Position numbers and translations under genes: made by a program | Shown here: positions 9,501 through 63,200 of the stretch, one piece after another | How the letters are laid out: every line of letters begins with the position of its first letter | How positions within the stretch are numbered: position 1 is the first letter of the stretch | Notes under the pieces: model-generated | The model's database searches: none | Told to the model about the DNA's origin: nothing | What the model saw: only the letters and a program-made list of their open reading frames with translations | Assembly: GCF_000315625.1 (NCBI RefSeq) | Contig: NW_005434666.1 | Span: 62,001-126,000, forward strand | Reading direction: 5' to 3' | DNA from: Guillardia theta CCMP2712 | Taxonomy: Eukaryota > Protista > Cryptophyta | DNA: 64,000 bases

Positions 9501-9737
9501 GCATGAGAGGTTGTAGCAGCAACCGACGACATGAGAGGTTGTAGCAGCAAGCTGCTCCGAGGGGCCTCTGACTGATCCAACAAGAGCTCCTCTCCCAGGC
9601 TCGAGGGATGCGGTGACTAATGCTTCGGTGTTGAAGATCCTCCTGACCTCCTTCAGGCGTCTTAGCCTTTCCTCCACTGTCTCTCGCTGCCTCCTCTTTG
9701 CCAGACCACGTTTAGGCGTCTGCACCTTCGTCTGCAG

Positions 9738-10472
9738 GTTCCTCCTGGTACAGTCAGCTCAACGAGCGCTCCATGCAGGCGCCCCTGCCTTCGTGTCCCC
9801 AGTCCTGACAAGCAGATTGATATCATACGGGCAGCCTTCTGCCTTCAGACGGTCCCCTTCCCCCAGCCATCGCTACAAGTTGTTCCCTCCCTCACTGTCC
9901 TTATCATCTTTCTCTACTGTGCTCGCTGCCAGCGCTGGCCGGCACACAGAGAATGCAGCAAGAGTTTTCATCGTGGGGGCTGGCATTGGAGGGGTAGAGC
10001 ACCTGACAGTGAGGGCGCAAGAGGTTTTGAAGCGAGCAGACGCTGTGGTGTATGACTCTCTTGCAGACGAGGTCAGACGTGGGGATAAAACTCCTCTTTC
10101 TCCTCCCTCCTCTCCCTCCCCTGATCTCCCCGCCTCCCTTCCTCCCTCCTCTCCTGATTTCTCCTATCCTCTCCTCTCCCGTCACTCTCCTCTCTCTCTC
10201 CCTCCTTCTCTTCTCTCCCTCCTTTTCTCCTTGCATGACTGATGACCTCCCTCCATTTTCCTTCCCCTCTCTTCATCTTTTCCTTACTCTCTCGCTTATG
10301 CTGATCCGTTAGCTTGCAGGAGCTTCTTTCTCTCGTGCCGGCGCATTGCGAGCGATTGTTCGTGGGCAAGAGAGGAGGGATGAAAGAGACCTCGACGAAG
10401 CAGCAAGACATAGATCGGCTTCTAGTCGAGCTTTCTGCTGATCCCTCCAAGAGATGTATCGTTAGACTTAAG
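9738..10472 (+). CDS. uroporphyrinogen-III C-methyltransferase (SUMT/CobA/UPM1-like), N-terminal exons only
   Basis: VFIVGAGIGGVEHLTVRAQEVLKRADAVVYDSLADE|ELLSLVPAHCERLFVGKRGG...QQDIDRLLVEL...IVRLK, preceded by a Ser/Arg-rich transit-like stretch (APAFVSP); start codon and C-terminal exons not found. Confidence 0.85.
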
Positions 10473-13152: not shown

Positions 13153-14199
13153 GTTTCTAGTGCCCGCCGTCCTTCTTCAAGCCGATCCGCTGAGCAGTAG
13201 ACATGGGCATGTCCTCAGAGCCAGAGAGTCTTGCAGGAGGAGCGTCGACATGGACAGTGTTGAACTGATTCAGGTCTTCATTGTTGATCGAGATCCTCGT
13301 TGGGTTTCGACGAAGCATCTCTACCTGACTCGCGCTATGTCAGTCAGGGGCTGCATAAATCTTCATGTCCTTGTCTAAGGCACGTGAAAATCCTCCAAAG
13401 CCTTTCTCCCTCCATCCTTCCCCATCAGTTCCCACCCGTCCTCCTAAACCCTCCCCCCTCCCCCCTCCACCCTCCTCCCTCTTCCTTCATTATTTACTAG
13501 TTCGAATTTTTTCCATTTCATAAGGCGGAACCAAGAGTGCTGAAACCTACGAAACAAAATAGAAAATATCCCCATTTATTTCATCAAAATTGAATATTGN
13601 NNNNNNNNNNNNNNNNNNNNNNNNNNNNNNNNNNNNNNNNNNNNNNNNNNNNNNNNNNNNNNNNNNNNNNNNNNNNNNNNNNNNNNNNNNNNNNNNNNNG
13701 GATGAAAGAGACCTCGACGAAGCAGCAAGACATAGATCGGCTTCTAGTCGAGCTTTCTGCTGATCCCTCCAAGAGATGTATCGTTAGACTTAAGGTGAAG
13801 ATGATGTGCGTGCTGGACAATGTGATATCTCTCTTGTCCTCCTTGCTTCTCTCTCGCTCCCTTCTGCTTTCTCAACCCAGAAGGGTTGAAAAACTCCCTC
13901 CCTCCCTCCCTCCCTCCCTCCCTCCCTCCCTCCCTCCCTCCCTCCTCCCTCCCCCCTCCTCCCTCCTCCCTCTCCCTCCATTTTTTTCTAGTTCGAATTT
14001 TTTCCTTTCATAAGGTGGAACCAAGAGTGCTGAAACCTACGAAACAAATTCGAAAATATCCCCATTTATTTCAACAAAGTTTGAAAAATGTATTCGGGAC
14101 ACCATGGCGGGTCCGCCTCAAGGGCTGCCGCGGCTAGAAAGCATGCTAGCTAGGAAGGAGGGAGAGAGGGAGGGAGGGAGGGAGGGAGGGAGGGGAGGC

Positions 14200-45240: not shown

Positions 45241-46168
45241 ACTAATGTAAGCACGGGCTTCCTCTTGGAAAAGATTGAAAAGGAAATTGTTGCCACCCAT
45301 GGGAACGGGTGAAATGGGATGTTAACATTATAGGGAAAGATTCTAATGGAATGAATCTATATGGCAGTTGTAACTTACTGCACGTGGCGTCCGCATCTTC
45401 ATATCTCTGCAATTCTTTTCTGTCGACTTCGTGTAGCTCTTTGAAATTGCTGCTGGGAGTAGGAAAACGACGATGCTTGACAAAGTCACATACAGAGAAC
45501 ATGGAGCTGGCGAACAAGAGGTTGATAATATCTCGTAGTTACTCTCTTCTTGTCCCTTCTCTGAAGATCCCCATCACTTCTCTCGCATTCTCTACATCAC
45601 CATCAGGTCGTGTTCCGATTCGCTACAGTTCTGGTTTCGCGTTGCCTGACTCCACCCCTACCCCTGATTTTTGTCCACCCTACCCACTCACAAAAATATT
45701 CTCCATAACCACCCCTGAAGATTGAACGGAAAGTGAGGGAAACAGACCTCATTAAATTTAATACCACCGGTACAATTCATACCACCTACCGGTCGATTGG
45801 TCAAGTTTTCGCTGGTCGCCACGATTACGAAGCAGGAACGAGGGAGAAGGAGAAGAGAGTGGAGGAGAGATGGAGGAGGAGAGATGGAGGAAGAGAGATG
45901 GAGGAGGAGGGAGGGAGGGTCTGTGGGAGGAGAGAGGAAGTGGAGATGGAGAGGACACGAGAAGGATGTTGACGGTCCCTTGAGTGTTGCATGAAGATGA
46001 AAGGGGCTGTCGGTGAAAGGGAGAGTTTTACTTCCTCTTCAAGGAGATACAACTGACGGTTTGCGTGAAACCATCAGATGGATGTGGTTTAAGACAAACA
46101 AGGAAGTGAAGGAGAGGGAGAAGAACCAGCTACTACACAACACACGCACAACAAGAGAACGACAAACA

Positions 46169-47240
46169 TGATGAGCTTGAGGAAAGTCTGCAGATCACCC
46201 TCTTTGCGCATTCTTCAGAGGTACAGCGACATGTTCCTTCATCGGATCTCTTGACACAGCTTGTTACCTTCAAGTCACAGGGTGTTCAATCATCGCAGGG
46301 GATACATCTGCAACCCCGAGAGCATCGCCCACTGCCGCGTGAGGGAGGAGCGTGGTAGCGCGAGGGAGCATGACGGAACTTGTTACAGGATCTTGTCCAG
46401 CATGCAGATGTCGAGGGGTACCTGTGCCTGGCGTTCTATCCCAAGGAGATCCGGCAGCACATGTGAGCAAGGAGATGAACAGCCTGCTCATAGTCGGCTG
46501 ACTTGCTCCAGCCTCGCTATCAAGGCGTTCAATGTGGAGGTCGCAAAGGCTGCGGACAAGAGCTCGAATGAGAAGATGACGGAAATCAGGTGAGCAGACC
46601 TCGATGTCGCCGGCATGCTGACATTGTGTTTGCTGATGACCGATCGCTGTGCTGATTGCTCTCAACGTTGTGCTTGAACAGGCTTCAATGGTGGAGAAGT
46701 GTTATTGAGAAGCTACCGACGAAGCAGCTTCCCACCCATCCTGTTGTTGGTGATGAGACAAGTTCTCAGTGCGATGTTGCCCGAGCTCATTACTTGCAGA
46801 TGCGCTGTGTGAGACTTTCCACAAGTACGACCTGGACATGGGTCAGTGATTGTGTTGATCGAAATCCTCTGAAGTGTTGGACAAGACCTTCTCTACTCGC
46901 TCGTTGACAAGAGAATCCAAGATCTGAATGTCAAGATCCCTGAAGTGTGAATAGCACTGAGATACATTTCTGGTTTCTCACTCTTCCTTCCGCTCCCCCA
47001 TCGCTCTGCAGACTCTGTACTATACCGAAGAATACGCCGAAGGAACCCAAGGAGCCTTGCTGAAGCTTGCGCTGAAGGTCCTGTCTCTTGAATGTTTCAG
47101 ACTCTTCGCATTCTGTTCGGGTGTCCTTGTTGAAACTCCTCTGCTGACTGGGTTTCTCCCTCCTCTCTTTCGCTGAAACTCCTTCCTTTCTGTCAGGTCT
47201 TGGGTGCGCACACGGTGCCCGGCAATGTCAAGGCTGCGCA
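46169..47240 (+). CDS. NDUFAF6: NDUFAF6-like complex I assembly factor (squalene/phytoene synthase fold), 3' incomplete
   Basis: Basic mitochondrial-like leader; HCR|DLVQHADVEGYLCLAFYP..|LAIKAFNVEVA..IR|LQWWR..HPVV|DAL..EEYAEGTQGALLKLAL; C-terminal third absent. Confidence 0.8.
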
Positions 47241-49942: not shown

Positions 49943-52053
49943 TCTCGATTATAGCTTCACCCAGCTAGGCAACTCGTAGTCTGCTGATCACATGTCTCTA
50001 GCCTTCAATTCCTACCCTCATGTTGAAGAATTCCCATGCATCCCATGGCATCCGTCTGCACTCTAGGGTTTCGTCTCTCCCAGCCTTACTTTCGCTCTAT
50101 CCTCCACATCACGATCCTCGTCGTCGCATCAGCTGGCCAGCACCAAGGTGATGGCTCCATTGTCACACCATCCAGCCAACACAAAGAGAATCCTCACATG
50201 GCACCATCTACCGACTCGATCTCTCCTGCAACTGCACATGCTCTCATCCTCCCCTCCATTGTCTGCGTCCCTCCTCCTCTACCCTCCATCCTTACTTGAT
50301 CGCCGACCGTGCGGACATGACGCAGATCAGATGGTGAAGGGGTGGGGGTTATTTTGTGGGGGGTATCTCAATTTTGGGTAGGGTGTATGGACATACCGGT
50401 ACTGATATCAACATCCTGATCTCTAAAACATTTATATCTATCTCAGAGGGGTGTGCAAAAGACAAAGAGGGTGATTGTATGCAAGGGTGTGTAATATGTG
50501 GTAGGGTGGTATTCATAGGGGGTACCTCCAGTATAACCCTCTACTGGACACGACATCTATCCACCCCCCACCCCGACAACTTGGCCCTACCACAGCTGAG
50601 ACTCTTACCCCCCAAAGAAACCTTTAAAGTACCCCTACCTTGACTACCCGTCATGGAGATAAGTCACTAATAGCTACTACCCCTTCTTGATATACCCCTT
50701 CAAATCATATCACTAGTACCGGTGTACATTGCACCACCACCCCACCCTGGATCCTTCATTACTGTACTACCCAGATTGTACCAATCCAATACCCCACCCC
50801 TTTCACTCCAAGAGATCTGAGCGGATACAGACCGGTGGTTGACGTTGTGCCAATGGCCGCAAGTCGGGGAGGGGAAGGAGAAGAGGAATGGCGGGAAGGA
50901 AGGAGTTTGCAGTTTGAGGATCACAATGACGATTCACTGAGACTGACGATCTTTAGTTAGCCCTCAATTCAAGAAGAAGAAGACGAAGTGGAAGATGACG
51001 ATTGAGGGAAAGGAATGTTGAGGGAGGTTTTAGTGCCAGTACAATCTTCACTTGGTAAATTCATCTAGGTGGGGCACGAGACCAATAGGGAGGATGAGGG
51101 GCAGAGAGATCCAAGTTGCCCTAGTTTGTAGTGCGAGGGTAAGAGTGGTTGCCAAACAAGAGAGCGTAGAAGTAAGCAGAAAACTAGCAAGAGGCGGTGT
51201 TAAGTTTAAGCGAAAGCGTACTTTTTCTCTGTATCGTACTTGACTGGTCAAGGCTCTGGATCATTGAGTCGAATGGAACTATTTTCTCTGATGGATTTGG
51301 TTTGCAGTGCCATAGAGACCAATGCTCTCGTGAGACGAAGGGACCAGGTTGTACATCTTACTTTCAAGGCGAGAAGGGAAGAAACCGATAGGAAGCTCGA
51401 AAGAATCGAAGTCTTGGAGGAACATGTGGGACTACATCTACAAGTATCTCGTCAACTTCCTCGTCTTTGTTCGCATGCATTGCCCCTGCGGTCGAATGTC
51501 GAGAGCTCAACCTCGCCAACCTCTGGAGTCCATGGCCTGAGAGCAGAGATGAGGGAGGGGAACGTGTGATGGTGAACAATTCGTAACAGGGGAACACACT
51601 GATCTTCTCAATGTGCACTTTGTCTCCCTGTATTCAGTTATTCGGGGATTCGGGGCAGTGAATGTTTTCGTTTTTTGTGTTTGCTCGATCGTTTTTTGGG
51701 TTCATATGAATTTCTCTGATATAATCACCCTTAGAAGATTCCTTGCCTGCCTGTACACCTCCTTCAATCCTTCTTGCTTCTACAACCCCTCCCTTCCTCC
51801 CTCCTTCCTTCCTCCCTCCTCCCTCCTCCCTCCTCCCTCCTCCCTCCTCCCTCCTCCCTCCTCCCTCCCCCTTCCTTCAGGCTCCTCACGAAGTTCATTC
51901 GTCTCACCATCGCCACCACCCCCATTTTTTCACTACCCACCCTCATAATATAGCTTCTACTACCCCTTCTTTTAATACTTGATACCCCACCCACTTGCAT
52001 CATCTAATAATATAGAGAGCGGGTTCGCGTTTCAGTCATAAAGGCCTGCCGCC

Positions 52054-53380
52054 ATGGCGGGGCCGCGCGCAGCGACGAGCGGGCTGGCTCTGCTAGTACC
52101 GCTCCTCCTCTGTTTATCTCTGGCGAACATGGCCTCTTGCTTCATGCTCGCGCCTGTGCAGACGCCTCGAGCCCTGAACTTGCGCAAGACTGCGGCAGTC
52201 ACTTGCCCTGCTCCTCGGAGTTTGTGCTCAGCGAAGGGTAGGAGTGGACTTCAAAGCGTGCAAGGCTCGCTGACTGCGCCACCACGACTATGGGATGCAG
52301 CGAAGGAAGGAAACTATGATGTGTTCAATGCCGTGCTGCCTGGTCTGAATGTGATTTCTGCCGCTCCTGAGGCTAAAGAGATCAACATCATGGAAAGGGT
52401 GGGGGCGAACAAGGCGCTGGTGGTCTTCATGCGCCATGCTGGCTGACCTTTCTGTTGGGAGCTTGCAGCTCAGTTGAACAAGAAGTTGGACATCATGAAG
52501 GAGAATGGTGTAGAACTTGTTGTCGTCACTGTCGCAAGCCCCACAAAGCTGCAGGAGTTCATCGCAGCAGCGGAGTCGCTTCCCGCGGAGTACTTGTACT
52601 GCGACCCGTCTCTCTCCTCCTACCAGGTGGCGGCGAGCAGGAGGATGGTGATCGGTCTGACTTGTCTTGCTCAAGGCTCTGGAGTTTCTTTCCAAGTTCG
52701 GCTTCGAGAATGGAGCTTTCCAGACCGGAACTCTCATTCTACGGAGGATTGCGGAGAGAGGAAGGGAGGGGCTGAAAGAAATGTCTACTGCCACCAAGAA
52801 CTACACCAAGGTATGATCCTGCCTGTGTTTCAACTCGACTGCTCGGACCCCTCCCCTCCCTCCTTTTCTTCCTCCCCTCTCCTCTTCTCTCCCATCCCTC
52901 ACCTTCTCCACCTTCTCCACCCTCTCCCCTGCCCTCCCTCCTCTTCTCTCTCCTCCCGTCTCCTCTCCCCACCCTCATCCTCTTTCCCCATTCCCCTCTT
53001 CTCTCCTCTTCCTTCGTCCTCCTACCTCCCAACACTGTTAGCTTCTACTCTGCTTCCGACTGACTCACCATGTGTCAGTTCTCCCCCGTCGGGCTTGTCT
53101 CGGGCAAGGCCTTCTCCACGGAGGATTTGGACGGCGTCATGCAACTGGGAGGCGCTTTTGCTTTGCAGAACAACAAGGTACGACCATCGAGTTGCAATGA
53201 TGGACCTGTTCTGTCTGCTCGTTTTCATGATATGTTTGTTTTCTCCATTCACTCAGATGCTTCACTTGCTATCTCCCCTCATGCCCTGCTCAGGTTGTCT
53301 TTGCGCATCGCGATCTGGGCGTGGCCGATCACTTCGACATCGACGAGTCCCTTCGATCTCTCGGAGTCATGGCAGCCTAA
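52054..53380 (+). CDS. plastid-targeted peroxiredoxin-like (AhpC/TSA-2, PRXL2/SelU-like) selenoprotein; Sec codon TGA at 52444-52446
   Basis: Exons 52054-52626, ~52676-52810, ~53079-53177, ~53294-53380; LVVFMRHAG-U-PFCWELAAQL continues in frame to YLYCDPS..Y.AL, QLGGAF, FAHRD..VADH; SECIS in the 3' UTR. Confidence 0.92.
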
Positions 53381-53420
53381 ACTGAGCCACCGATTGCTCT
53401 CTTGCTCTGCCTGCCTGTGA

Positions 53421-53500
53421 AAGTCTGTTGAGGAGCTGAATGACGCGCGAGACATCAATGTCTTTGACAATGCTCGTGGCTGAAAATCTCCAAAGGACTG
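53421..53500 (+). promoter_or_regulatory. eukaryotic type II SECIS element
   Basis: ATGA core 53440-53443, ~10-bp helix II (gcgcgagacat/atgctcgtggc), unpaired AA 53457-53458, apical mini-stem tgtc-ttt-gaca, 3' TGAA 53481-53484, helix I ggag/ctcc and agtc/gact. Confidence 0.85.
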
Positions 53501-53639
53501 AAGAGGAGAGGAGGAGGAGAGGCTCACGCAGGAAAGAATAAAACTCTTGCTCGGCTCAGACCTAAAGGGCATACTCTTGATCTTGATCGCTCGAGCTGCA
53601 TCAGGGCTGTCAGGCAGACTCAGTAGAGGCTGAGATCGC

Positions 53640-56600
53640 TCACCTCGTCCTTTGCGGCTTCTTGCCGTGTCTCATACCCTTCTTGGGAGCTGGGGTCTTG
53701 ACAGAGACGATCTCAGGTTCAATCACCCCAACCTCACCCAGCTGCTCCTCCTCCGACTCCTCCGAGATCTCCTCCTGCTCAAGTCGTTCACAACGCTCTC
53801 GTCCATCCCGCAGGTATCTCACGTCTTCGTCTCGCTCCCTCTGCAAAGGATGATGCTCCAACGCCTCGAGATCCTGTCTCGACAGTCAGCCACCTCACGT
53901 GCAAGGCTGCTCGACCATCAAGCCTTCCTCCTCCGCGTCCTCGTGTGGCCCTTGCTCCTGGTCCCTCTCAGTCTCTGCGATTCAATGCGTTCATACGGCA
54001 GCAAGGGGAGGAGGGAGGGAGTCACCGGCCTCTGACTCTGACTCCGACAAGCCCTCAATGGCCGGGGCCTTCCTGCTCTCCGGCACTTCGAACATGTGCC
54101 GGTTCTTCAGACGGGCGTACTGACTGGGCAGGCTCGGGAGTCGTGGGGTCCAGCGCTTGAGGGAGTAGATGTGGCAAGCGGCGATGAGGAGGGATGCCTG
54201 CTCAGGAGTTAGAGGGCAAGACGAGCAGGAGGGGAGGGGTACCAGCAGCAGGGATCCCCCAAAGACTGCCACGTCCCACTCGGACTGCTGGACAACGAAG
54301 GAGGGGCTAAAGGGCAGGTCGTACGTGTAGCTGTCGACTGATCCTGACTGATACGTTTCTGGCATGTCCCCAGAGCCCACCTGCACCTGCGGGAGAGGGT
54401 CATGAGCGTCACTAGAGCTCGCGCGAGGTATCGAGGATGAGGATCGATTATGAAAGGTATTGGATGTCAGGGAGGAGGGAGAAGACAAGGAAGGAGGGAG
54501 GAGGGAGGAGAGAAGAGGGGGGAGGGAGGAGGGAGGAGGGAGGAGGGGTATCCTACCGCGACAGGGAGGTTCAAGTTTGCCCCAGCTAAGAATGTTGTGC
54601 ATCTTGGAACAACACAGGAGACAGCTGAGTTCGACTGGCAGTCTCGTCACTCGAGAGATCACCTCCAGACTGACCGCAAACTTACCAGCCACCGGGTAGC
54701 CGAGCAGGAGCTGTCACCAACAGAGGCCTTGGGGGAGTAGTCGTGAACTCCATAGTGGTTCCCGATGATGGTGATGGTGTTTTCCCCCATCGCCGGCCCG
54801 TTGACGTCAGAGGGGTACAACACTTGAGGGGGGAAGTACCCCAACTCCCTCATGTACACTCCCGACTGCTGCCCTCGGACCACCTGCAGGGGGATCTGAC
54901 CCCCAACCCCGGGGCCGGACGTCCCGGAGGAGATCTTGCAGATGAGCTGAGAGTCTGAGAGCCATGTGGTGGAAGCGCAAGCCGTGTGGCCCACTAGGGC
55001 GAGCGCGTTGACGTCTGCGTTGGACGAGCTGGCCAGAGGGTCATTGGTGCTGCCGAAGTTCTGACCCTTGATCGTGATGTCAATGTTTCCTGTGCTTGGG
55101 ATGTTAGAAACAGACACTTGAGCGATGTAAGGACGATCGTAAGAGAAGGCCACGCTGGCATTCGAAGCGACTACTCCTTTCTTCGCTAGAGACAAGGTCG
55201 TCGGCAGCTTCCTGGAGTTCCCAGCTTGTACCGTACACGATATGCTCGAGTCGCTGGTCCACGTCAGCTGCCGGCAGGATGTGGCTCCGATCTGAGCGAC
55301 ATGCTCATAAGCTGCGGTGGTACCGAAGTTTTCGCCGAGGATGGTCATGCGGGAGCCTCCAGTCGTTGGGCCGTTGAAAGGGCGGAGGCTCGTGATGGCT
55401 GGAGCCTTGTATGAGAAGATCCCTGACGCGTAGCCTGCCTGCCCGACCACTGTAGCAACGACGACTCCGCATCCTTCTTCGCCACACACCGCCGATCTCA
55501 CCCCAGCTGGGGCACGGCAGACGAGGGAGGAGTCGGAGGTCCAGGTGGAGGCAACACACGCAGTGTCGCCCAGTCTTGCTCGCGCTGACGAGTCCCATGC
55601 TCCGAAGCCGAGGCCATAGATGGTGATCGAGCTCTCTCCTACCGCTCGCGCGCTCGCGGGGTGCAGCGAGGATATGGCAGGAGCTGCGAAAGAGATTCCA
55701 GAGCCATTCCATGCTGCGAAGGTGGTTCCGACCGTCAGCTGCAGGGCTCTCGAGGCGCCGAGACCCGGGGAGGTCGTGCAGACAACGACTGAGTCAGACA
55801 ACCACTCGGTAGCCGAGCATGCAGACTGCTGCGCGCTGAGCTTGACAGACTTGATTTCCGATGAGGAGACGAACATGCTCCTGTCCCTGCTGCACCAGGT
55901 GCTGTTGCACTCCAAGGTGCCGAAGTTGCGCCCGAAGGCTGTGATGCGGAGGTTGCCGGTGGTTGGCGACAGGACGGGGGAGGCAGACGTGATGGTAGGC
56001 GCGTCGAACGAGAAGGCGTTGCTCAGCTGCGCGATCTGACTACCAGCCGTGTCATCCAACGCCAACGTGACCGTGTGGGCCGCGCCGATGCCAGGAGGAG
56101 TCCTGCAGACAAGACTAGAGTCCGACACCCACCTGAGCGTTATGCACTGCGAGTGAGCGATGGAGGCCCCGAAAGTCCCCGGGTTGTTGCAACAGCCAGT
56201 CCCTTGACAGGCGGGACAAGATTGCTTCGGAGTCATCTTGCACAGATACGCGTTGGCGAAGATCTGGTTGGCTTCAAACAACGTGGATGTGCCGGAAGAT
56301 GCTTTTGTTTCGCAGCTCACCCCATCCTTGACATACCCGGAGACGACATGGGCAGGGCAGGGCACGTACGTCACCTCGCCGCTGCTCGAGACGCTTGAGG
56401 GACACTGGTTCACCACGAACGAGTTTGACCTGGGGATGCTCCGGTCGCTGATGTCTCTACAGGCAAGCTTCACAGCAGCAGCATCCCCCGCGTTGAGCAC
56501 ACTCCGTCTGAACTCAGCCTTGGCACATGCGATGGGGTCATGGGCGAGGCTGAAAGGAAGGATGCTCCACCAGGTGATGTTGACAGGAGCAGAGCCGATC

Positions 56601-58063
56601 TCTTGACCCACGTAGAACCTCCCTGACCCGGGGATGTTGAAACCCGTGATGCACTGCGACGGCTGCTGCTCATCGAAGAGGATGTACTCTCCGTCTGCGA
56701 TGCAAGTCAGTGATGAGACGGGAAAGGGTGGCGCTTCTACAACAACAGCAACACACCGTGTATGTAGTAGTCGCATTGCGACATCAGTATCGGATTGAAG
56801 TCTGAGCCCCATCCGAAGTTTCTTCCAAGGATCGTGACGGCCTCAAAACCTCCCGGAGGTCCGTTGTTCGGGGAGATGCCATACACCTCTGGCTTGTCGT
56901 AGGAGAAGGCGTTTGCCAGGCCCTTTGGGTTCTCGCTTCGCCTTCCGGCAGCAGCAAGAGGCTGTCTGTTCAGGTCTACTCTCACGTTGTGCGCTGACCC
57001 AGTCCCTCTCGGGACTGCATTGCACACCACAGTAGAGTCTGAGACCCAGGAGGAGTAGATGCACTTGCTGTCCCCTATCATGACGTCTACAGTCGTTGAG
57101 GGAAACGTCCCAAAGTTCTTTCCAAACACAGTCATCGCTGACAGGCCGTAGGGAGCTGCGTTTGCCGGGGAGATTTGAGACTCATATGGAGCATCGTAGG
57201 AGAAATAGTTTGCAAGGCTCCTCACCTACGAAAGCATCACAAAGAAATCTTGCTGCTGCTGCAACTTACGTCCATGCATCGTCCTGCCGTTACATTCACT
57301 GTGAGGTCATAAGACAAGCCAGGAGCGCTGATCAGAGTCAGAGATGAATCCGACGTCCATGTCACGTTCTGCCCCTTCGTCTGGCCCAGCGAGGCATCGA
57401 CGTAGAGGCAAGGAGGGGATCCTACCAGAGTGTGAGAGGTGTGAGAGAAGAGACAAGGGTGGAGCATAGAGAAAGGTATAGGAGAGAGAGAACAAACTGC
57501 TGGACCTGAGCTTTGACAGGGAGTGGAGGACAGCTCGGCTGCTGTACAGGGCGAGGGGGCATACCCGAATCCGATCCCGAAGACGGTGAGGACAACTCCT
57601 CCTGCTCAGGAGCCATCTCAGCCGAGACATGGCTAGTAAGGGGAAGCACCGACCTGTTGCAGGACTGTTCCAGTGCCATGAGCCGCTCTCAGAGGAGTAC
57701 CTCCCTCCTTTCGGGCTCTTCAAAAGGTCCTTGATCGCTTGTTGATAATTTTGGGCAGAGATCGCAAGTGCAGAGGCATCCGAGTAGGAAGGTGGCTGCT
57801 GCCCTTGGTAGTAGGAAGCAGGCCTGAGAGAGGAGGGACATCGTCAGCGGCACATGCGCATAAGGGAGTAGCTACCATCGACTCTGCGTCGCTGCCACTA
57901 ACTCCTCGTACCATGCTGAGTTGGATTGAAAGGGTGCTAAAGCAAACAGAGAGCTGTTGGAATTAGTTGTCGAGCTTGCTGTGCATATGGAGGCGTTGCG
58001 AGAAAGAATAAAGGAAAGTAGAAATTGAAGGAAGAGGCTCCGTCTGGCGCGGGAGAGCGCCAT
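53640..58063 (-). CDS. large IPT/TIG-repeat single-pass membrane protein
   Basis: Signal peptide MALSRARRSLFLQFLLSFIL; about 8 repeats of FSYD.P.I...G..G...ITI.G.NFG...C....W.SDS...C...G; TM near 54270-54170; acidic tail; 3' end may extend to ~53455. Confidence 0.88.
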
Positions 58064-60274: not shown

Positions 60275-63200
60275 CTACTCTTCAACTTCCACATCCGCCT
60301 GCTCCAGTGAACGGGCGAGAAGCTCCTGCTTGTACTCCATGGAGGCATCCTGCTGCCAGTCCCAATAGTTGATGGAGACGAGCCGGTAGCCTGCCGATCT
60401 CAGGGCGCGTCTCTTGATTCTCGTGCTCCCGAGAGGAAGCTGCGAGCCTTGACCTGGAGAGGAGGGTGAGAGGAGGGTGAGAGGAGGAGGAGGAGAGGAG
60501 GAGGAGAGGAGGAGCGCACAGAAGTGTGAAGGTCCGTCGAATTCGACAATGATGTTTGCTTGCGGTATCCAGCAGTCAAGGGAATATCCGGTCTTGTTGT
60601 CCACACGCTCATCGAGCACCTGGTAGCCCATGCTTCTCAACACGCTGCTCATGTTGGCCTGTTGGGTCGACGAGAGCGAGACCTCCTCGCTGGATTCCTT
60701 GAAGCTCTGCTGCCATGATGAGAGAGCATGGGACTGGCCGAGGGGAAGGAGGGGAGTAGGGAAGGAGAGAAGCAAGAGAGAAGGAAAGCGAGCAGGGGAA
60801 GCGGAGTAGTAAAGGAGAGAGTTGAGAAACAAGTATTCGAAAGACAAGGGAGAGGGTGAGGCTGTGCAGGAATTTAGGATACGTCACCTTGAAGCAATCT
60901 TCCTTGAGCTGGTCTATTAGCTTTTTGTCGAACCCCTCCTGCTCGTCAACTGGGTTGATGATGAGGAACTGATGAATCTGAAAGCCATGTCAGCCTCCCG
61001 GCATTTCGAGGAGAAGACGATAGAAGGGGCCATGGAATTTGAAAGATCAGAGGGAGACGCACGAATGAGGAGGAGGAGTAACCTGGGCCTTTGCAGGAGC
61101 GTCCAACTTTGTCCTCCGAGCTATGACTGCATGCAAAATCCACTTGATGATGCTTGAGGAATTGGGAGGGAGAAATGGACTCAAAACTGCTACACTCCAA
61201 GCAAACAAGGCAACATACTGTCCACGAGTCATGTAACGCTGAAAATGTAGCAGACAAGGAACGATTTTGCAAGAGGATTAAAGGAGAGAAGGAGAGAAGG
61301 ACCGAGAAAAAGGAGGAAAGGAGTTGAGAGCGAAGTAACACAGAGGTCAGTGAGGAGTCAGGAGGGAACAAGAGGGGCAGACAACAGGTCGAATCACCTG
61401 CGAGCTGAAAATAGAGTGATCCTGACTTATAACCCTTCCAAGGTTTCTATCCAGCAGTGCAGCATCTTCGATGTACAGGAAGGCTTGAGCACGAAGCAAG
61501 CTTGCTGCAGCCTAGCAGTTTTGAGCCTCAGCCGACAATGTCTCTATTCCCTCTCCATGCTATCCTCGCCTATTCTACTTCAAATCGACTGCCGCTGCAT
61601 TTCCTTCCTATCTACCTTTGCGCATCTCTTGTCTCCGACCTCTCCATCATCTCACTTTCAAAGGCTCTTCACTCTCGTCACCTGAGGATCGATCTGTCGC
61701 TCGGGCCTCTTCCTCAATGCAGCGCTCATGTGACCCCAAATCTCCTCGTCTCGCCATCGGAGCTGGCGGGAGGTGATTCCGATCAGGTGAGCAAGAAGCA
61801 AGTTTCCATCTTCACCTGCACCATTGCGCTCGAAATCGAAGCAGCATGAAATTCATTCAGCTCTCGAGGATTCAAGAGCAGGAGGAGGCGCTTGAGGTGC
61901 TGGTACAGTTCCATATCCTCCAGCCCTGCCCTGCCGCGCCTGTCAATAGAGCTCCCGAGGGGATACGGAGGATGAATGCGAGGACCTAGAGAAATCTCTG
62001 AACAGGGAGGACACGCATTGGATGCTGTAGGAGCCTGCCGCCTGCTGCGACTGAACCGCGGAGCTGCATCGCGGGTTACGGTGAAAGCTCAGCTGAGGGA
62101 GTTGGCAGACCTGAGGAACTGAAGTATGTCGTTGCTGAGCATGTCCACTCGCAAGAACGCGTTGAGGAGCATCGAGACCTCTGCCGCGGCAGAGCAGAGC
62201 AAGGAGGAGAGGGTCAGCAGTCGGTGCTCGAAGCCGGGCAACGGCCATGGCAAGGGCTCACCCTGTGGGCTCAGCTCGTCGAGGTCGAGCTGCTGGACGA
62301 CCTTGGAGATGTGCTGGAAGAGATTCTGGTCGAAGAATTGGAGGCGGATGAACGAGGTGATGAGAGAGGAGATAGTCTTGGAATCTGCATCCCACAAGCT
62401 CCGTTTCGACCTGTTGAGGTCCGACAAGATGTTTCTGTTGGGCAAGAATCATGCGCGAAAAGGCAGCTTTGAGGAGGAAGTGAAGGAAAGGATGGGGGAA
62501 AGAGAAGACAGCTGGAGGAGGGAGGGAGGAGGGAGGAGGGAGGAGAGTAGGATAGGCAGGCATCCAGGTGAAAGATAGCAAAGAGACATCAGGAATCATT
62601 TAGAACCGAACTTGATGAAAGGGGGAAGGGAACAATCAAGACATTGTGACCTCCCAACAATCTCTGACTGAAACGTCTTGCTCGCTTCTAGCAAAAACCT
62701 TTCATCCTTGAGATCCACCCTGGCCATACTTTCCAAGACTGAGGCCAAGGAGCTGCGATTCAAGTTAGGGGATCAGCACAGTACACGGGAATGAACAACG
62801 TTGGATGCTTCTGTTCCGCAGGCAGATTTCGGTACAACTTGACCGTCAGCCTCCATCTGTCGATCCAGGGTGAGATGAGGTCGGAGGAGGATGAAATCGC
62901 ACATGTTTTCATCTCTAACATTCGCACGGGCAAGAGCTTGAGAAACCAGCACTATCGTGCCTGCCATGTCCCTCTTTGACACCGCTCCTCCTCCTCCTCC
63001 CTGGAGGCTCGTCCTCTTGCCGCCCTCCTCACCATCCTCCCACCTGGCAAGAAGACACGAATGACCAGGAGCAAGATGAATCAAGTCCCTTGCGAAAATC
63101 AAATCATCTTACCATTCGTTCAACAATGTCGTGATGCGCGCCAACAGCAGGTCGGTGACAGCCCTGATCCTCCGAAGCTTGTCCTCCTCCTCATCAGCTC

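What the first reader, a model, noticed from the sequence alone, without database searches (positions are those of the whole stretch)
52054..53500. Plastid-targeted selenoprotein hidden behind an apparent stop codon, with a SECIS
Seen: the ORF track splits this gene at TGA 52444-52446, but the TGA sits at the first Cys position of a redox motif (F-M-R-H-A-G-TGA-P-F-C, i.e. UxxC). The frame continues through three introns into the rest of an AhpC/TSA-2 (PRXL2/SelU-like) fold. About 60 nt after the real TAA (53380) is a canonical type II SECIS (AUGA, ~10-bp stem, AA, mini-stem, GA). The N-terminus is a signal peptide ending ASC|F followed by a Ser/Arg/Ala-rich transit peptide. Established: UGA plus a 3' UTR SECIS recodes Sec in eukaryotes, and +1 Phe bipartite leaders direct import into complex red plastids. 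Inference: a Sec-containing redox enzyme is made on ER-bound ribosomes and imported across four membranes into the stroma. Automated annotation would probably truncate or mis-splice it.
Basis: partly seen in the sequence, partly recalled or inferred. Interest (0 to 1): 0.9.

Follow-up and report, generated by a model that had tools for sequence, protein, structure and literature searches.

The report
Plastid-targeted SelU-like selenoprotein gene, Guillardia
This is a real, expressed four-exon gene of the cryptophyte alga Guillardia theta for a thioredoxin-fold (AhpC/TSA_2, SelU/PRXL2-like) redox enzyme whose first active-site cysteine is a UGA-encoded selenocysteine and whose leader looks like a plastid import signal; the kind of protein is already known in algae, but the public gene model cuts the active site out.

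Summary
The gene (window 52054-53380, + strand) has four exons. Spliced transcript contigs from two studies confirm all three introns. TGA 52444-52446 is exonic and unchanged in RNA and DNA contigs, in the motif FMRHAG-U-PFCWELA.

Eight divergent relatives, from marine metatranscriptome and culture-transcriptome contigs, all keep TGA at this codon. Synonymous changes lie on both sides of it, and each has a SECIS-like hairpin in its 3' UTR.

The G. theta hairpin (53428-53495) has the AUGA / AA / mini-stem / GA layout. It is the best hit in the window for covariance models built without it, but the scores are weak (E 0.03 and 0.56). Rfam's SECIS model misses it.

The genome holds tRNA-Sec, SepSecS and GCUG-type thioredoxin reductases.

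Where the N-terminus is complete, G. theta, Hanusia phi and seven relatives all show a signal peptide followed by Phe/Trp at +1 and a basic, acid-poor transit peptide. This predicts stromal import; it has not been shown.

The public model (EKX52441.1, 238 aa) removes the UxxC motif as a false 42-nt intron and skips exon 2.

SelU-type selenoproteins and a 14-member G. theta selenoproteome are already published. The scan also found other selenoprotein genes elsewhere in this genome. Verdict: a sound call and a new member of a known kind.

The parts
52023..52053 (+). 5' UTR (minimum extent)
   Evidence: Transcript contig of run X3 starts at 52023 and that of X1 at 52048.
52054..52626 (+). Exon 1, codons 1-191: leader, N-terminal extension, first strand and UxxC centre, start of the AhpC/TSA_2 domain
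   Evidence: Translation. RNA contigs are continuous over 52048-52624 with 0 differences. The 60 aa after the TGA hit PF13911 at 29.5 bits.
52054..52140 (+). Predicted signal peptide (residues 1-29), ending ASC before Phe30
   Evidence: Hydrophobic core at residues 10-21, mean Kyte-Doolittle 2.76. Small residues at -3 and -1. Hanusia phi ortholog...MTAC|F. Heuristic only; no SignalP run.
52141..52278 (+). Predicted transit peptide (about residues 30-75), starting with Phe
   Evidence: First 40 residues: 6 K/R, 0 D/E, 7 S/T, 6 A. First acidic residue is D81. The C-terminal limit is an estimate.
52421..52462 (+). False 42-nt GT..AG 'intron' of the public gene model. It removes VVFMRHAG-U-PFCWE.
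   Evidence: P0004 = EKX52441.1 reads ...GANKAL|LAAQLNKKL.... No such joint appears in any RNA contig.
52444..52446 (+). UGA codon 131, read as selenocysteine
   Evidence: In frame. Unchanged in RNA and DNA contigs. TGA at the same column in 8 of 8 orthologous transcripts.
52444..52455 (+). Redox motif U-P-F-C
   Evidence: G-U-PFCWELA is invariant in all 9 sequences, with synonymous codon changes. Genome paralog L004 has G-C-PLC-REEA in the same motif context.
52627..52675 (+). Intron 1 (49 nt, GT..AG)
   Evidence: Joint 52624>52674 (cut +2) in X1 and X3.
52676..52810 (+). Exon 2 (45 codons), skipped by the public model
   Evidence: Present in RNA contigs and in the MMETSP ORF P0005.
52811..53078 (+). 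Intron 2 (268 nt, GT..AG, CT-rich low complexity)
   Evidence: Joint 52808>53077 (cut +2) in X1 and X3.
53079..53177 (+). Exon 3 (33 codons)
53178..53293 (+). Intron 3 (116 nt, GT..AG)
   Evidence: Joint 53175>53292 (cut +2) in X1 and X3.
53294..53380 (+). Exon 4 coding part (28 codons) plus TAA at 53378-53380
53428..53495 (+). SECIS-like element, type II. Features: AUGA 53440-53443; AA 53457-53458; mini-stem 53459-53469; GA 53482-53483; lower helix GGAG 53432-53435 / CUCC 53488-53491.
   Evidence: The minimum-free-energy fold has this shape. It is the only scanner hit in 53381-53600. It ranks first in the 64-kb window, both strands, for models R2 (17.6 bits, E 0.032) and R3 (12.3 bits, E 0.56), both built without it. 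Raw RNA reads in both directions cover it.
53537..53542 (+). AATAAA, likely poly(A) signal. The mRNA probably ends near 53560.
   Evidence: The 3'-biased raw reads of X22 fall from depth 14 (53436-53499) to 2.8 (53500-53563) and to about 0 beyond.

Best explanation
The locus is the nuclear gene GUITHDRAFT_133530 of Guillardia theta CCMP2712. Correctly spliced, it has four exons and encodes a 297-residue precursor.

The precursor has three parts:
- a signal peptide (about residues 1-29);
- a transit peptide that begins with Phe30;
- a mature protein of about 215 residues, an AhpC/TSA_2 (SelU/PRXL2-like) thioredoxin-fold protein with redox centre U131-P-F-C134.

UGA131 is recoded as selenocysteine by the SECIS-like hairpin at 53428-53495 in a 3' UTR of about 180 nt, using the cell's tRNA-Sec, SepSecS and associated factors.

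Inferred steps:
- The precursor is made on ER-bound ribosomes.
- Signal-peptide cleavage exposes Phe.
- The protein is passed across the periplastid and the two inner plastid membranes into the stroma.
- There the selenol/thiol pair cycles through a selenenylsulfide to reduce a peroxide or disulfide substrate. The substrate and the reductant are unknown.

Shown: gene structure, expression, exonic TGA, conservation across the TGA, domain identity, presence of the Sec machinery.
Inferred: actual Sec insertion, SECIS function, stromal location, chemistry.
For: - Gene model and splicing. Independent MMETSP ORFs P0003 (ends at the TGA) and P0005 (starts at the first Met after it, and holds exons 1-4) lie on contigs of equal length (longest contig 5213 nt for each).
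- Organism and locus tag.
- Domain: PF13911 at 48.5 bits, E 1.3e-12, profile positions 10-112 of 114.
- TGA conservation: 8 of 8 orthologous transcripts, 41-55% identical after the U, carry TGA in LVVFMRHxG-TGA-PFCWELA. Synonymous changes flank it: CGC/CGA/AGG/CGG, CAT/CAC, CCT/CCC/CCG, TGT/TGC, CTT/CTG/CTA/CTC.
- Truncated database ORFs: nearly all of the 33 orthogroup proteins start downstream of the motif, mostly at a Met, and none of them contains it, as expected if an in-frame stop splits the ORF.
- SECIS: the structure is present in G. theta and in all 8 orthologs. Background is 0.039 sites per kb per strand. It ranks first in the window for two models that exclude it. It shares the AUGA / unpaired A / mini-stem layout of the G. 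theta TR1, TR2 and Rdx SECIS.
- Machinery: tRNA-SeC (anticodon TCA) at 72.9 bits. SepSecS at 423 bits. Two thioredoxin reductases ending in GCUG.
- Published record: 14 selenoproteins reported in G. theta (PMC7539508).
- Targeting: hydrophobic core, small -3/-1 residues, F or W at +1 and a net-positive transit peptide in 9 of 9 complete N-termini. Phe at +1 is the conserved mark of plastid pre-sequences in cryptophytes and diatoms (PMC4329603).
Against: - Rfam SECIS_1 gives no hit, even at E<=10 on 180 nt.
- The first 3-sequence model missed the element.
- The later models score it only 17.6 and 12.3 bits. A structurally poor antisense site in exon 3 comes close behind.
- It would not be found in a genome-wide scan.
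- The fold's z-score is ordinary, -0.86.
- AUGA-AA spacing is 13 nt against 12 nt in all other examples, and the helix needs two bulges.
- There is no protein-level evidence for Sec and no localisation experiment.
- Signal-peptide and cleavage-site calls are my own heuristics, not SignalP or ASAFind.
- Similarity to the Cys-containing genome paralog is at motif level only; tblastn is not significant.
Confidence: 0.75

Rival explanations
1. The gene is a genuine selenoprotein, but the product is not stromal. The leader would deliver it to the ER or secretory path, the periplastid compartment or the thylakoid lumen.
For: Localisation rests only on sequence rules. By the paper's own figures, ASAFind-type prediction in G. 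theta has a sensitivity of 0.70-0.85 and a specificity of 0.88-0.97 (PMC4329603). Many selenoproteins of other eukaryotes are ER-resident or secreted (own knowledge).
Against: An aromatic residue sits exactly at +1 of the predicted cleavage site in 9 of 9 lineages. It is followed by 40 residues with 4-7 K/R and 0-2 D/E. That is the pattern described for plastid import, not for ER or periplastid proteins (PMC4329603).
Confidence: 0.17
2. The TGA is a true stop. The gene would yield a 130-residue peptide, or the public model is right and a 42-nt intron removes the TGA, giving a protein without a redox centre.
For: The public annotation EKX52441.1 and the Hanusia phi EukProt model both skip the TGA-bearing segment. 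ORF callers split every transcript at the TGA. The SECIS model scores are weak.
Against: No RNA contig shows a joint at 52421-52462, and exon 1 is continuous in two studies. The frame is under protein-level selection on both sides of the TGA in 9 lineages. The codon is TGA in all of them, never TAA, TAG or a sense codon. A stop there would cut the thioredoxin fold after its first strand and leave the PF13911 domain untranslated.
Confidence: 0.04
3. Sec is inserted, but the hairpin at 53428-53495 is not the element responsible. Another non-canonical structure in the mRNA would do the recoding.
For: No Rfam hit. Unusual 13-nt spacing and bulges. The region is overlapped by the 3' end of a convergent transcript.
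Against: It is the only AUGA...AA...GA hairpin in 53381-53600. The 3' UTR is only about 180 nt long. All 8 orthologs have a single comparable element in their 3' UTRs.
Confidence: 0.04

Closest known systems
Selenoprotein U (SelU / SELENOU; PRXL2 family; Pfam PF13911 AhpC-TSA_2)
   Same: Thioredoxin-fold AhpC/TSA_2 domain. Sec sits at the first position of a UxxC centre just before the Pfam domain. The 3' UTR holds a SECIS. The Sec form is reported in fish, birds, Ostreococcus and Thalassiosira, and in more than half of 36 algal genomes (PMC2375036, PMC7539508).
   Different: The motif here is RH-x-G-U-PFCWE-LA. The G. theta paralog that carries the RR-x-G-C-PLC-REEA motif (L004) has Cys, and tblastn does not link the two. 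So this is a separate, divergent clade inside PF13911. It carries a bipartite plastid-type leader and an N-terminal extension of about 35 residues. Orthology to vertebrate SelU1 was not tested.
Chloroplast-targeted Sec-type glutathione peroxidases of Chlamydomonas (CrGPxA/B)
   Same: Nuclear-encoded selenoproteins predicted to be imported into a plastid for peroxide defence (PMC3095285).
   Different: A different fold family (GPx). The plastid is primary, so import is post-translational through a simple transit peptide. There is no ER step.
Other G. theta selenoprotein genes (TR1, TR2 and an Rdx-family gene)
   Same: Same genome and the same recoding system. Type II SECIS with AUGA, unpaired A's, a 3-4-bp mini-stem and GA within about 100 nt of the stop codon.
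   Different: Their AUGA-AAA spacing is 12 nt and their helices have no bulges. They score 24-27 bits on Rfam SECIS_1, where this element scores nothing.
Bipartite (ASAFAP-type) plastid pre-sequences of red-lineage complex plastids
   Same: Signal peptide, small -3/-1 residues, Phe at +1, and a hydroxylated, basic, acid-poor transit peptide (PMC4329603).
   Different: The cleavage context is ASC|FML, not ASA|FAP. It was not scored with ASAFind or SignalP.

Membership tests
Eukaryotic selenoprotein (UGA recoded by a 3' UTR SECIS) | In-frame UGA inside the expressed coding exon, at a conserved redox position | tested here: met
   TGA at the same column in 9 of 9 lineages, with coding conservation on both sides.
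Eukaryotic selenoprotein (UGA recoded by a 3' UTR SECIS) | SECIS element (AUGA_AA_GA kink-turn hairpin) in the transcribed 3' UTR | tested here: inconclusive
   Structure and motifs are present and transcribed. The element ranks first in the window for models built without it, but at E 0.032 and 0.56. Rfam SECIS_1 gives no hit. Comparable elements occur in 8 of 8 orthologs. SECISearch3 was not available.
Eukaryotic selenoprotein (UGA recoded by a 3' UTR SECIS) | Sec machinery in the genome | tested here: met
   tRNA-SeC (TCA). SepSecS at 423 bits. GCUG thioredoxin reductases with SECIS.
Eukaryotic selenoprotein (UGA recoded by a 3' UTR SECIS) | Selenium in the protein (75Se labelling or mass spectrometry) | not testable with these tools
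   Needs an experiment.
SelU / PRXL2 (Pfam PF13911 AhpC-TSA_2) | Match to PF13911 above the curated cut-off, over the whole domain | tested here: met
   P0005: 48.5 bits against a cut-off of 27, profile positions 10-112 of 114. The exon-1 piece alone scores 29.5 bits.
SelU / PRXL2 (Pfam PF13911 AhpC-TSA_2) | C/U-x-x-C centre directly before the domain | tested here: met
   U-PF-C lies 8 residues before profile position 1. Paralog L004 has G-C-PL-C in the same context.
SelU / PRXL2 (Pfam PF13911 AhpC-TSA_2) | Orthology with vertebrate SelU1 or algal SELENOU entries (tree placement) | not tested
   No reference SelU sequences could be fetched. tblastn to the PRXL2A-like paralog L004 was not significant.
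Stroma-targeted protein of a red complex plastid (bipartite signal) | N-terminal signal peptide | tested here: inconclusive
   Hydrophobic core and the -3/-1 rule are met in 9 of 9 sequences by my own heuristic. No trained predictor was run.
Stroma-targeted protein of a red complex plastid (bipartite signal) | Aromatic residue (Phe) at +1 of the transit peptide, and a net-positive, acid-poor transit peptide | tested here: met
   F in 8 and W in 1 of 9 sequences. 4-7 K/R against 0-2 D/E in the next 40 residues. Criterion taken from PMC4329603.
Stroma-targeted protein of a red complex plastid (bipartite signal) | Experimental localisation | not testable with these tools
   Needs a GFP fusion or cell fractionation.

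The most novel reading that the evidence does not exclude
This gene represents a distinct clade of AhpC/TSA_2 proteins that was seen only in the Sec form in this sample (motif FMRHxG-U-PFCWELA). The clade carries a plastid leader in cryptophytes (Guillardia, Hanusia, a Teleaulax-containing cluster) and in other unidentified marine protists. If so, part of stromal redox defence in red-lineage complex plastids would depend on selenium, and on Sec decoding at ER-bound ribosomes. That would link selenium supply to photosynthetic stress tolerance in these algae.
Probability: 0.45. Interest if true: 0.55.

Novelty: new member of a known kind. Interest (0 to 1): 0.4.

Why it matters
- It corrects a public gene model. 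EKX52441.1 / XP_005839421.1 (238 aa) lacks its own active site and a whole exon. The Hanusia phi model has the same kind of defect, and in the searched length range every relative in the large protein collections is stored only as an N-terminally truncated ORF.
- It adds a well-supported example, with eight transcript-level orthologs, of a selenoprotein that carries a complex-plastid leader. The algal selenoproteome survey I read (PMC7539508) does not analyse targeting, and no paper in the searchable library pairs 'selenoprotein' with ASAFind.
- It gives a concrete candidate for asking whether selenium limitation affects plastid redox biology in cryptophytes.
- It does not change what is known about Sec decoding or protein import.

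Tried and rejected
- Rfam cmscan of 51000-55000 and of 53381-53560 at E<=10: no SECIS family hit. In the whole genome, Rfam SECIS_1 reaches only 27, 24 and 21 bits, all below its cut-off of 35. So its silence here is weak evidence.
- Model R1, built from three G. theta SECIS with flanks, did not find the element. It was over-fitted to flank sequence.
- Model R2 run on the whole genome returned only its own three training sites, and only 150 of 8703 candidates were scored.
- The runner-up of R2 and R3, antisense in exon 3 (53088-53152, - strand), has most helix pairs broken. The minus-strand transcript contigs laid here stop at 53292 and raw-read depth there is about zero. I rejected it as a chance match.
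- GPx locus L008 has a Sec codon, but my scanner found no convincing SECIS there. It was left out of the models.
- L010 (Rdx) and L014 (Sep15/SelM) proved to be Cys forms without SECIS hits. They serve as negative controls.
- TR2 was left out of alignment A7 because MAFFT misaligned its 3' arm.
- Protein searches with little yield:
  - the 60-aa piece found only Hanusia phi;
  - the exhaustive search with the Hanusia model gave 3 hits;
  - the PDB search gave none;
  - the metagenome locus scan gave none;
  - no contig is on record for the Hanusia protein;
  - exons 2-4, searched singly, are too short for Pfam.
- tblastn of the X-masked model against paralogs L004 and L005 was not significant.
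- Length limits mean that full-length Cys-form relatives longer than 262 aa could not have been seen. 'Sec only' therefore holds for the sample, not for the clade.
- No structure prediction was run. The read-through protein cannot be passed by reference, and I did not type it.
Full report
**Where and what.** The window is G000:C8:62001-126000 of an 87.1-Mb, 669-contig assembly. An exact-sequence look-up ties the locus to Guillardia theta CCMP2712, gene GUITHDRAFT_133530 (EKX52441.1 / XP_005839421.1 / UniRef L1JV47). G. theta is a cryptophyte with a four-membrane, red-alga-derived plastid.

**Observation.**
- ATG is at 52054.
- TGA at 52444-52446 is in frame, inside F-M-R-H-A-G-TGA-P-F-C-W-E.
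- Only one combination of GT..AG sites gives an open frame apart from that TGA without dropping transcript-supported codons: exons 52054-52626, 52676-52810, 53079-53177 and 53294-53380, with TAA at 53378-53380. Two other acceptor choices for intron 1 also stay open but remove 3 or 7 codons. The product has 297 codons.

**Transcript evidence.** One read-laying run on 51900-53800 used four runs.
- Contigs of X1 and X3, from two studies, carry exactly the joints 52627-52675, 52811-53078 and 53178-53293, all GT..AG.
- They cover exon 1 (52048-52624 and 52023-52624) without any joint or differing letter. The TGA is therefore exonic and reads TGA in RNA.
- X15 is colinear with the genome, keeps the introns and shows no difference. 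It behaves as DNA.
- In the protein collection the same transcript appears as two ORFs that list the same longest contig (5213 nt). P0003 (62 aa) ends ...VVFMRHAG at the TGA. P0005 (150 aa) starts at the first Met after it and contains exons 1-4 exactly as modelled.

**The public model is wrong.** P0004 (238 aa) reads ...GANKAL|LAAQLNKKL... and ...SSYQ|FSPVGL....
- It removes 52421-52462 as a 42-nt GT..AG 'intron'. That stretch holds VVFMRHAG-U-PFCWE.
- It skips exon 2.
- No RNA contig supports either event.
- With exon 2 restored, the Pfam AhpC-TSA_2 match grows from profile positions 1-50 (P0004, 38.3 bits) to 10-112 of 114 (P0005, 48.5 bits, E 1.3e-12).
- The EukProt model of the sister species Hanusia phi (P0001) likewise lacks the 18 residues around the motif and runs on into intron 1.

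**Is the TGA decoded?** A search with P0004 residues 78-238, followed by a profile search, found 33 proteins.
- Almost all are 115-157 aa long. Nearly all begin downstream of the motif, mostly at a Met, and none of them contains the motif.
- I fetched contigs for eight distinct lineages: L018, L022, L023, L029, L032, L033, L034 and L036. They come from marine metatranscriptomes, Logan and ENA assemblies, and culture transcriptomes (MMETSP).
- Every one has an upstream ORF in the same frame, ending at TGA inside L-V-V-F-M-R-H-x-G-TGA-P-F-C-W-E-L-A.
- The codon alignment shows an invariant TGA with synonymous third-position changes on both sides: Arg CGC/CGA/AGG/CGG, His CAT/CAC, Gly GGC/GGG, Pro CCT/CCC/CCG, Cys TGT/TGC, Leu CTT/CTG/CTA/CTC.
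- Identity to G. theta is 29-36% in the 55 columns before the U and 41-55% after it.
- This is the signature of one reading frame translated through the UGA.
- The genome has tRNA-SeC with anticodon TCA and SepSecS at 423 bits. It also has two thioredoxin reductases that end in G-C-U-G followed by a SECIS.
- A published survey counts 14 selenoproteins in 12 families in G. theta, and finds SELENOU among the most widespread Sec proteins of algae (PMC7539508). The text does not list the G. theta families, so I cannot say whether this gene was among them.

**The SECIS.** The unconstrained fold of 53415-53505 and of 53428-53495 gives the expected shape.
- Lower helix GGAG/CUCC.
- An internal loop with AUGA (53440) opposite UGAA (53481-53484).
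- A helix of about 10 bp with two single-base bulges.
- Unpaired CAA.
- A 4-bp mini-stem with a UUU loop.

Energies are -22.3 and -17.2 kcal/mol, and the z-score of -0.86 is ordinary.

Negative and weak results:
- Rfam SECIS_1 gives no hit. The same model reaches only 27 and 24 bits on the two clear TR SECIS of this genome, below its cut-off of 35.
- Model R2, built from 4 ortholog SECIS and 3 other G. theta SECIS without the candidate, ranks 53428-53495 (+) first in the 64-kb window on both strands, at 17.6 bits and E 0.032.
- Model R3, built from 10 sequences, again ranks it first, but at 12.3 bits and E 0.56.
- In both, an antisense site in exon 3 with a mostly broken helix follows closely. 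The models therefore give rank, not significance.
- The element would not be found genome-wide.

Scanner results:
- I wrote a scanner that asks for AUGA, 9-14 nt, unpaired AA, a closing helix and GA. The candidate is the only hit in 53381-53600.
- It finds the SECIS of TR1, TR2 and an Rdx-family gene.
- It finds nothing at two Cys-form controls.
- It finds one element in the 3' UTR of each of the 8 orthologs: AUGA or GUGA, 12 nt, AAA, mostly followed by a mini-stem.
- Its background in this window is 25 sites per 128 kb at loose settings, and 5 per 128 kb at spacing 12-13.

My judgement: the comparative picture (9 of 9) makes SECIS function very likely. The G. theta copy is a slightly off-consensus member.

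**3' end.**
- The raw reads of X22 are strongly 3'-biased and strand-specific.
- One direction covers exon 4 to about 53560, at depths of 22, 21.8, 14 and then 2.8. The other direction covers 53308-53563.
- Both directions cover the SECIS.
- AATAAA lies at 53537-53542.
- The RNA contigs run on into a CT..AC joint at 53596-53643. This is an intron of a convergent minus-strand gene that encodes IPT/TIG repeats.
- The two 3' UTRs therefore overlap by about 200-250 nt, and the overlap includes the SECIS.

**Targeting.**
- G. theta: MAGPRAATSGLALLVPLLLCLSLANMASC|FMLAPVQTPRALNLRK...
- Hanusia phi...LLPMTAC|FLLTPSLAPRP....
- The seven orthologs with complete N-termini give AQA|F, ATA|W, AAG|F, GSA|F, ASA|F, AWA|F and ALG|F.
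- Each has a hydrophobic core (mean Kyte-Doolittle 2.0-3.2) before the site. Each has 4-7 K/R against 0-2 D/E in the 40 residues after it.
- Phe at +1 and a basic, hydroxylated, acid-poor transit peptide mark plastid pre-sequences in diatoms, cryptophytes and dinoflagellates (PMC4329603).
- No trained predictor was available and no localisation data exist. This is a good prediction, not a finding.
- One 90%-identity cluster of the orthogroup contains a Teleaulax amphioxeia protein. The taxa of the other relatives are unknown.

**Family.**
- The domain is PF13911 AhpC-TSA_2, the PRXL2/SelU family.
- Three PF13911 loci exist in the genome.
  - This gene.
  - L004, with the motif VVFLIRRMG-C-PLC-REEA, a Cys form in the same motif context.
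  - L005, with HFGDLSSWEYA, in which neither redox position is kept.
- tblastn does not link this gene significantly to either paralog. It belongs to a divergent clade of the family.
- I did not test orthology with vertebrate SelU1.

**Novelty.**
- Sec-containing SelU is long known in Ostreococcus, Thalassiosira and many other algae (PMC2375036, PMC7539508).
- Plastid-directed selenoproteins are predicted in Chlamydomonas (PMC3095285).
- ER-translated selenoproteins are commonplace (own knowledge).
- What is new here is modest: a corrected gene model, and a conserved clade seen only in the Sec form, each member with a complex-plastid leader.
- This scan has already reported other selenoprotein genes in this genome, on other DNA: a DUF427 gene and a DsbA/FrnE gene.

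Noticed in passing
window 53300-53650, both strands: The 3' UTR of this gene overlaps, tail to tail, the 3' end of a convergent minus-strand gene that encodes IPT/TIG repeats (ORFs 54659-56812 and 56737-57225; intron 53596-53643 seen as a CT..AC joint). The SECIS lies inside the overlap, so antisense pairing could in principle mask it.
   Followed up: partly
window 53088-53152, minus strand (antisense to exon 3): Second-best hit of both SECIS covariance models (16.5 and 11.9 bits). It is driven by AUGACG...CAAA...CCGAGAC, most helix pairs are broken, and read depth there is about zero and the minus-strand transcript contigs laid here end at 53292. Taken as a chance match.
   Followed up: partly
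window 10380-10441 and 13702-13763, plus strand: Two identical 62-nt SECIS-like scanner hits lie 3.3 kb apart, which suggests a tandem duplication in this part of the window. Other scanner hits are at 9503-9571, 46168-46229, 61065-61119 (+) and 60652-60600 (-). None was checked for an upstream TGA-containing ORF.
   Followed up: no
window 51790-51870 and 52840-53030: Long CT-rich (CCTCC)n-type low-complexity tracts lie just upstream of the gene and fill most of intron 2. They cause spurious microRNA-family hits in Rfam.
   Followed up: no
window 52285-52380 (residues about 78-110): The N-terminal extension of the mature protein (LWDAAKEGNYDVFNAVLPGLNVI) looks like a single ankyrin-type repeat. 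The Hanusia ortholog matched 14 stretches of a 3385-aa protein (P0002) with this segment. The W...GD core is conserved in all orthologs.
   Followed up: no
L008 (G000:C23:675850-679173): A glutathione peroxidase gene with Sec (...NLASK-U-GLTD). Its coding region ends in TGATGA. My scanner found no convincing SECIS within 1.3 kb downstream, apart from one that overlaps the stop codons.
   Followed up: partly
L005 (G000:C65:13831-16998): A third AhpC-TSA_2 paralog has HFGDLSSWEYA where this gene has RHAG-U-PFCWELA. Both redox positions are lost (Asp and Ser), so it is probably a redox-inactive relative.
   Followed up: no
L001 (G000:C9) and L002 (G000:C115): Two thioredoxin reductase genes end in G-C-U-G, with type II SECIS 40-60 nt after the stop. 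They score below Rfam's SECIS_1 cut-off (27.2 and 24.4 bits against 35).
   Followed up: partly
L038 (G000:C65:300391-303476), 1500-1664: The tRNA-SeC(TCA) gene lies 6 nt from a tRNA-Ala(AGC) gene on the same strand.
   Followed up: no
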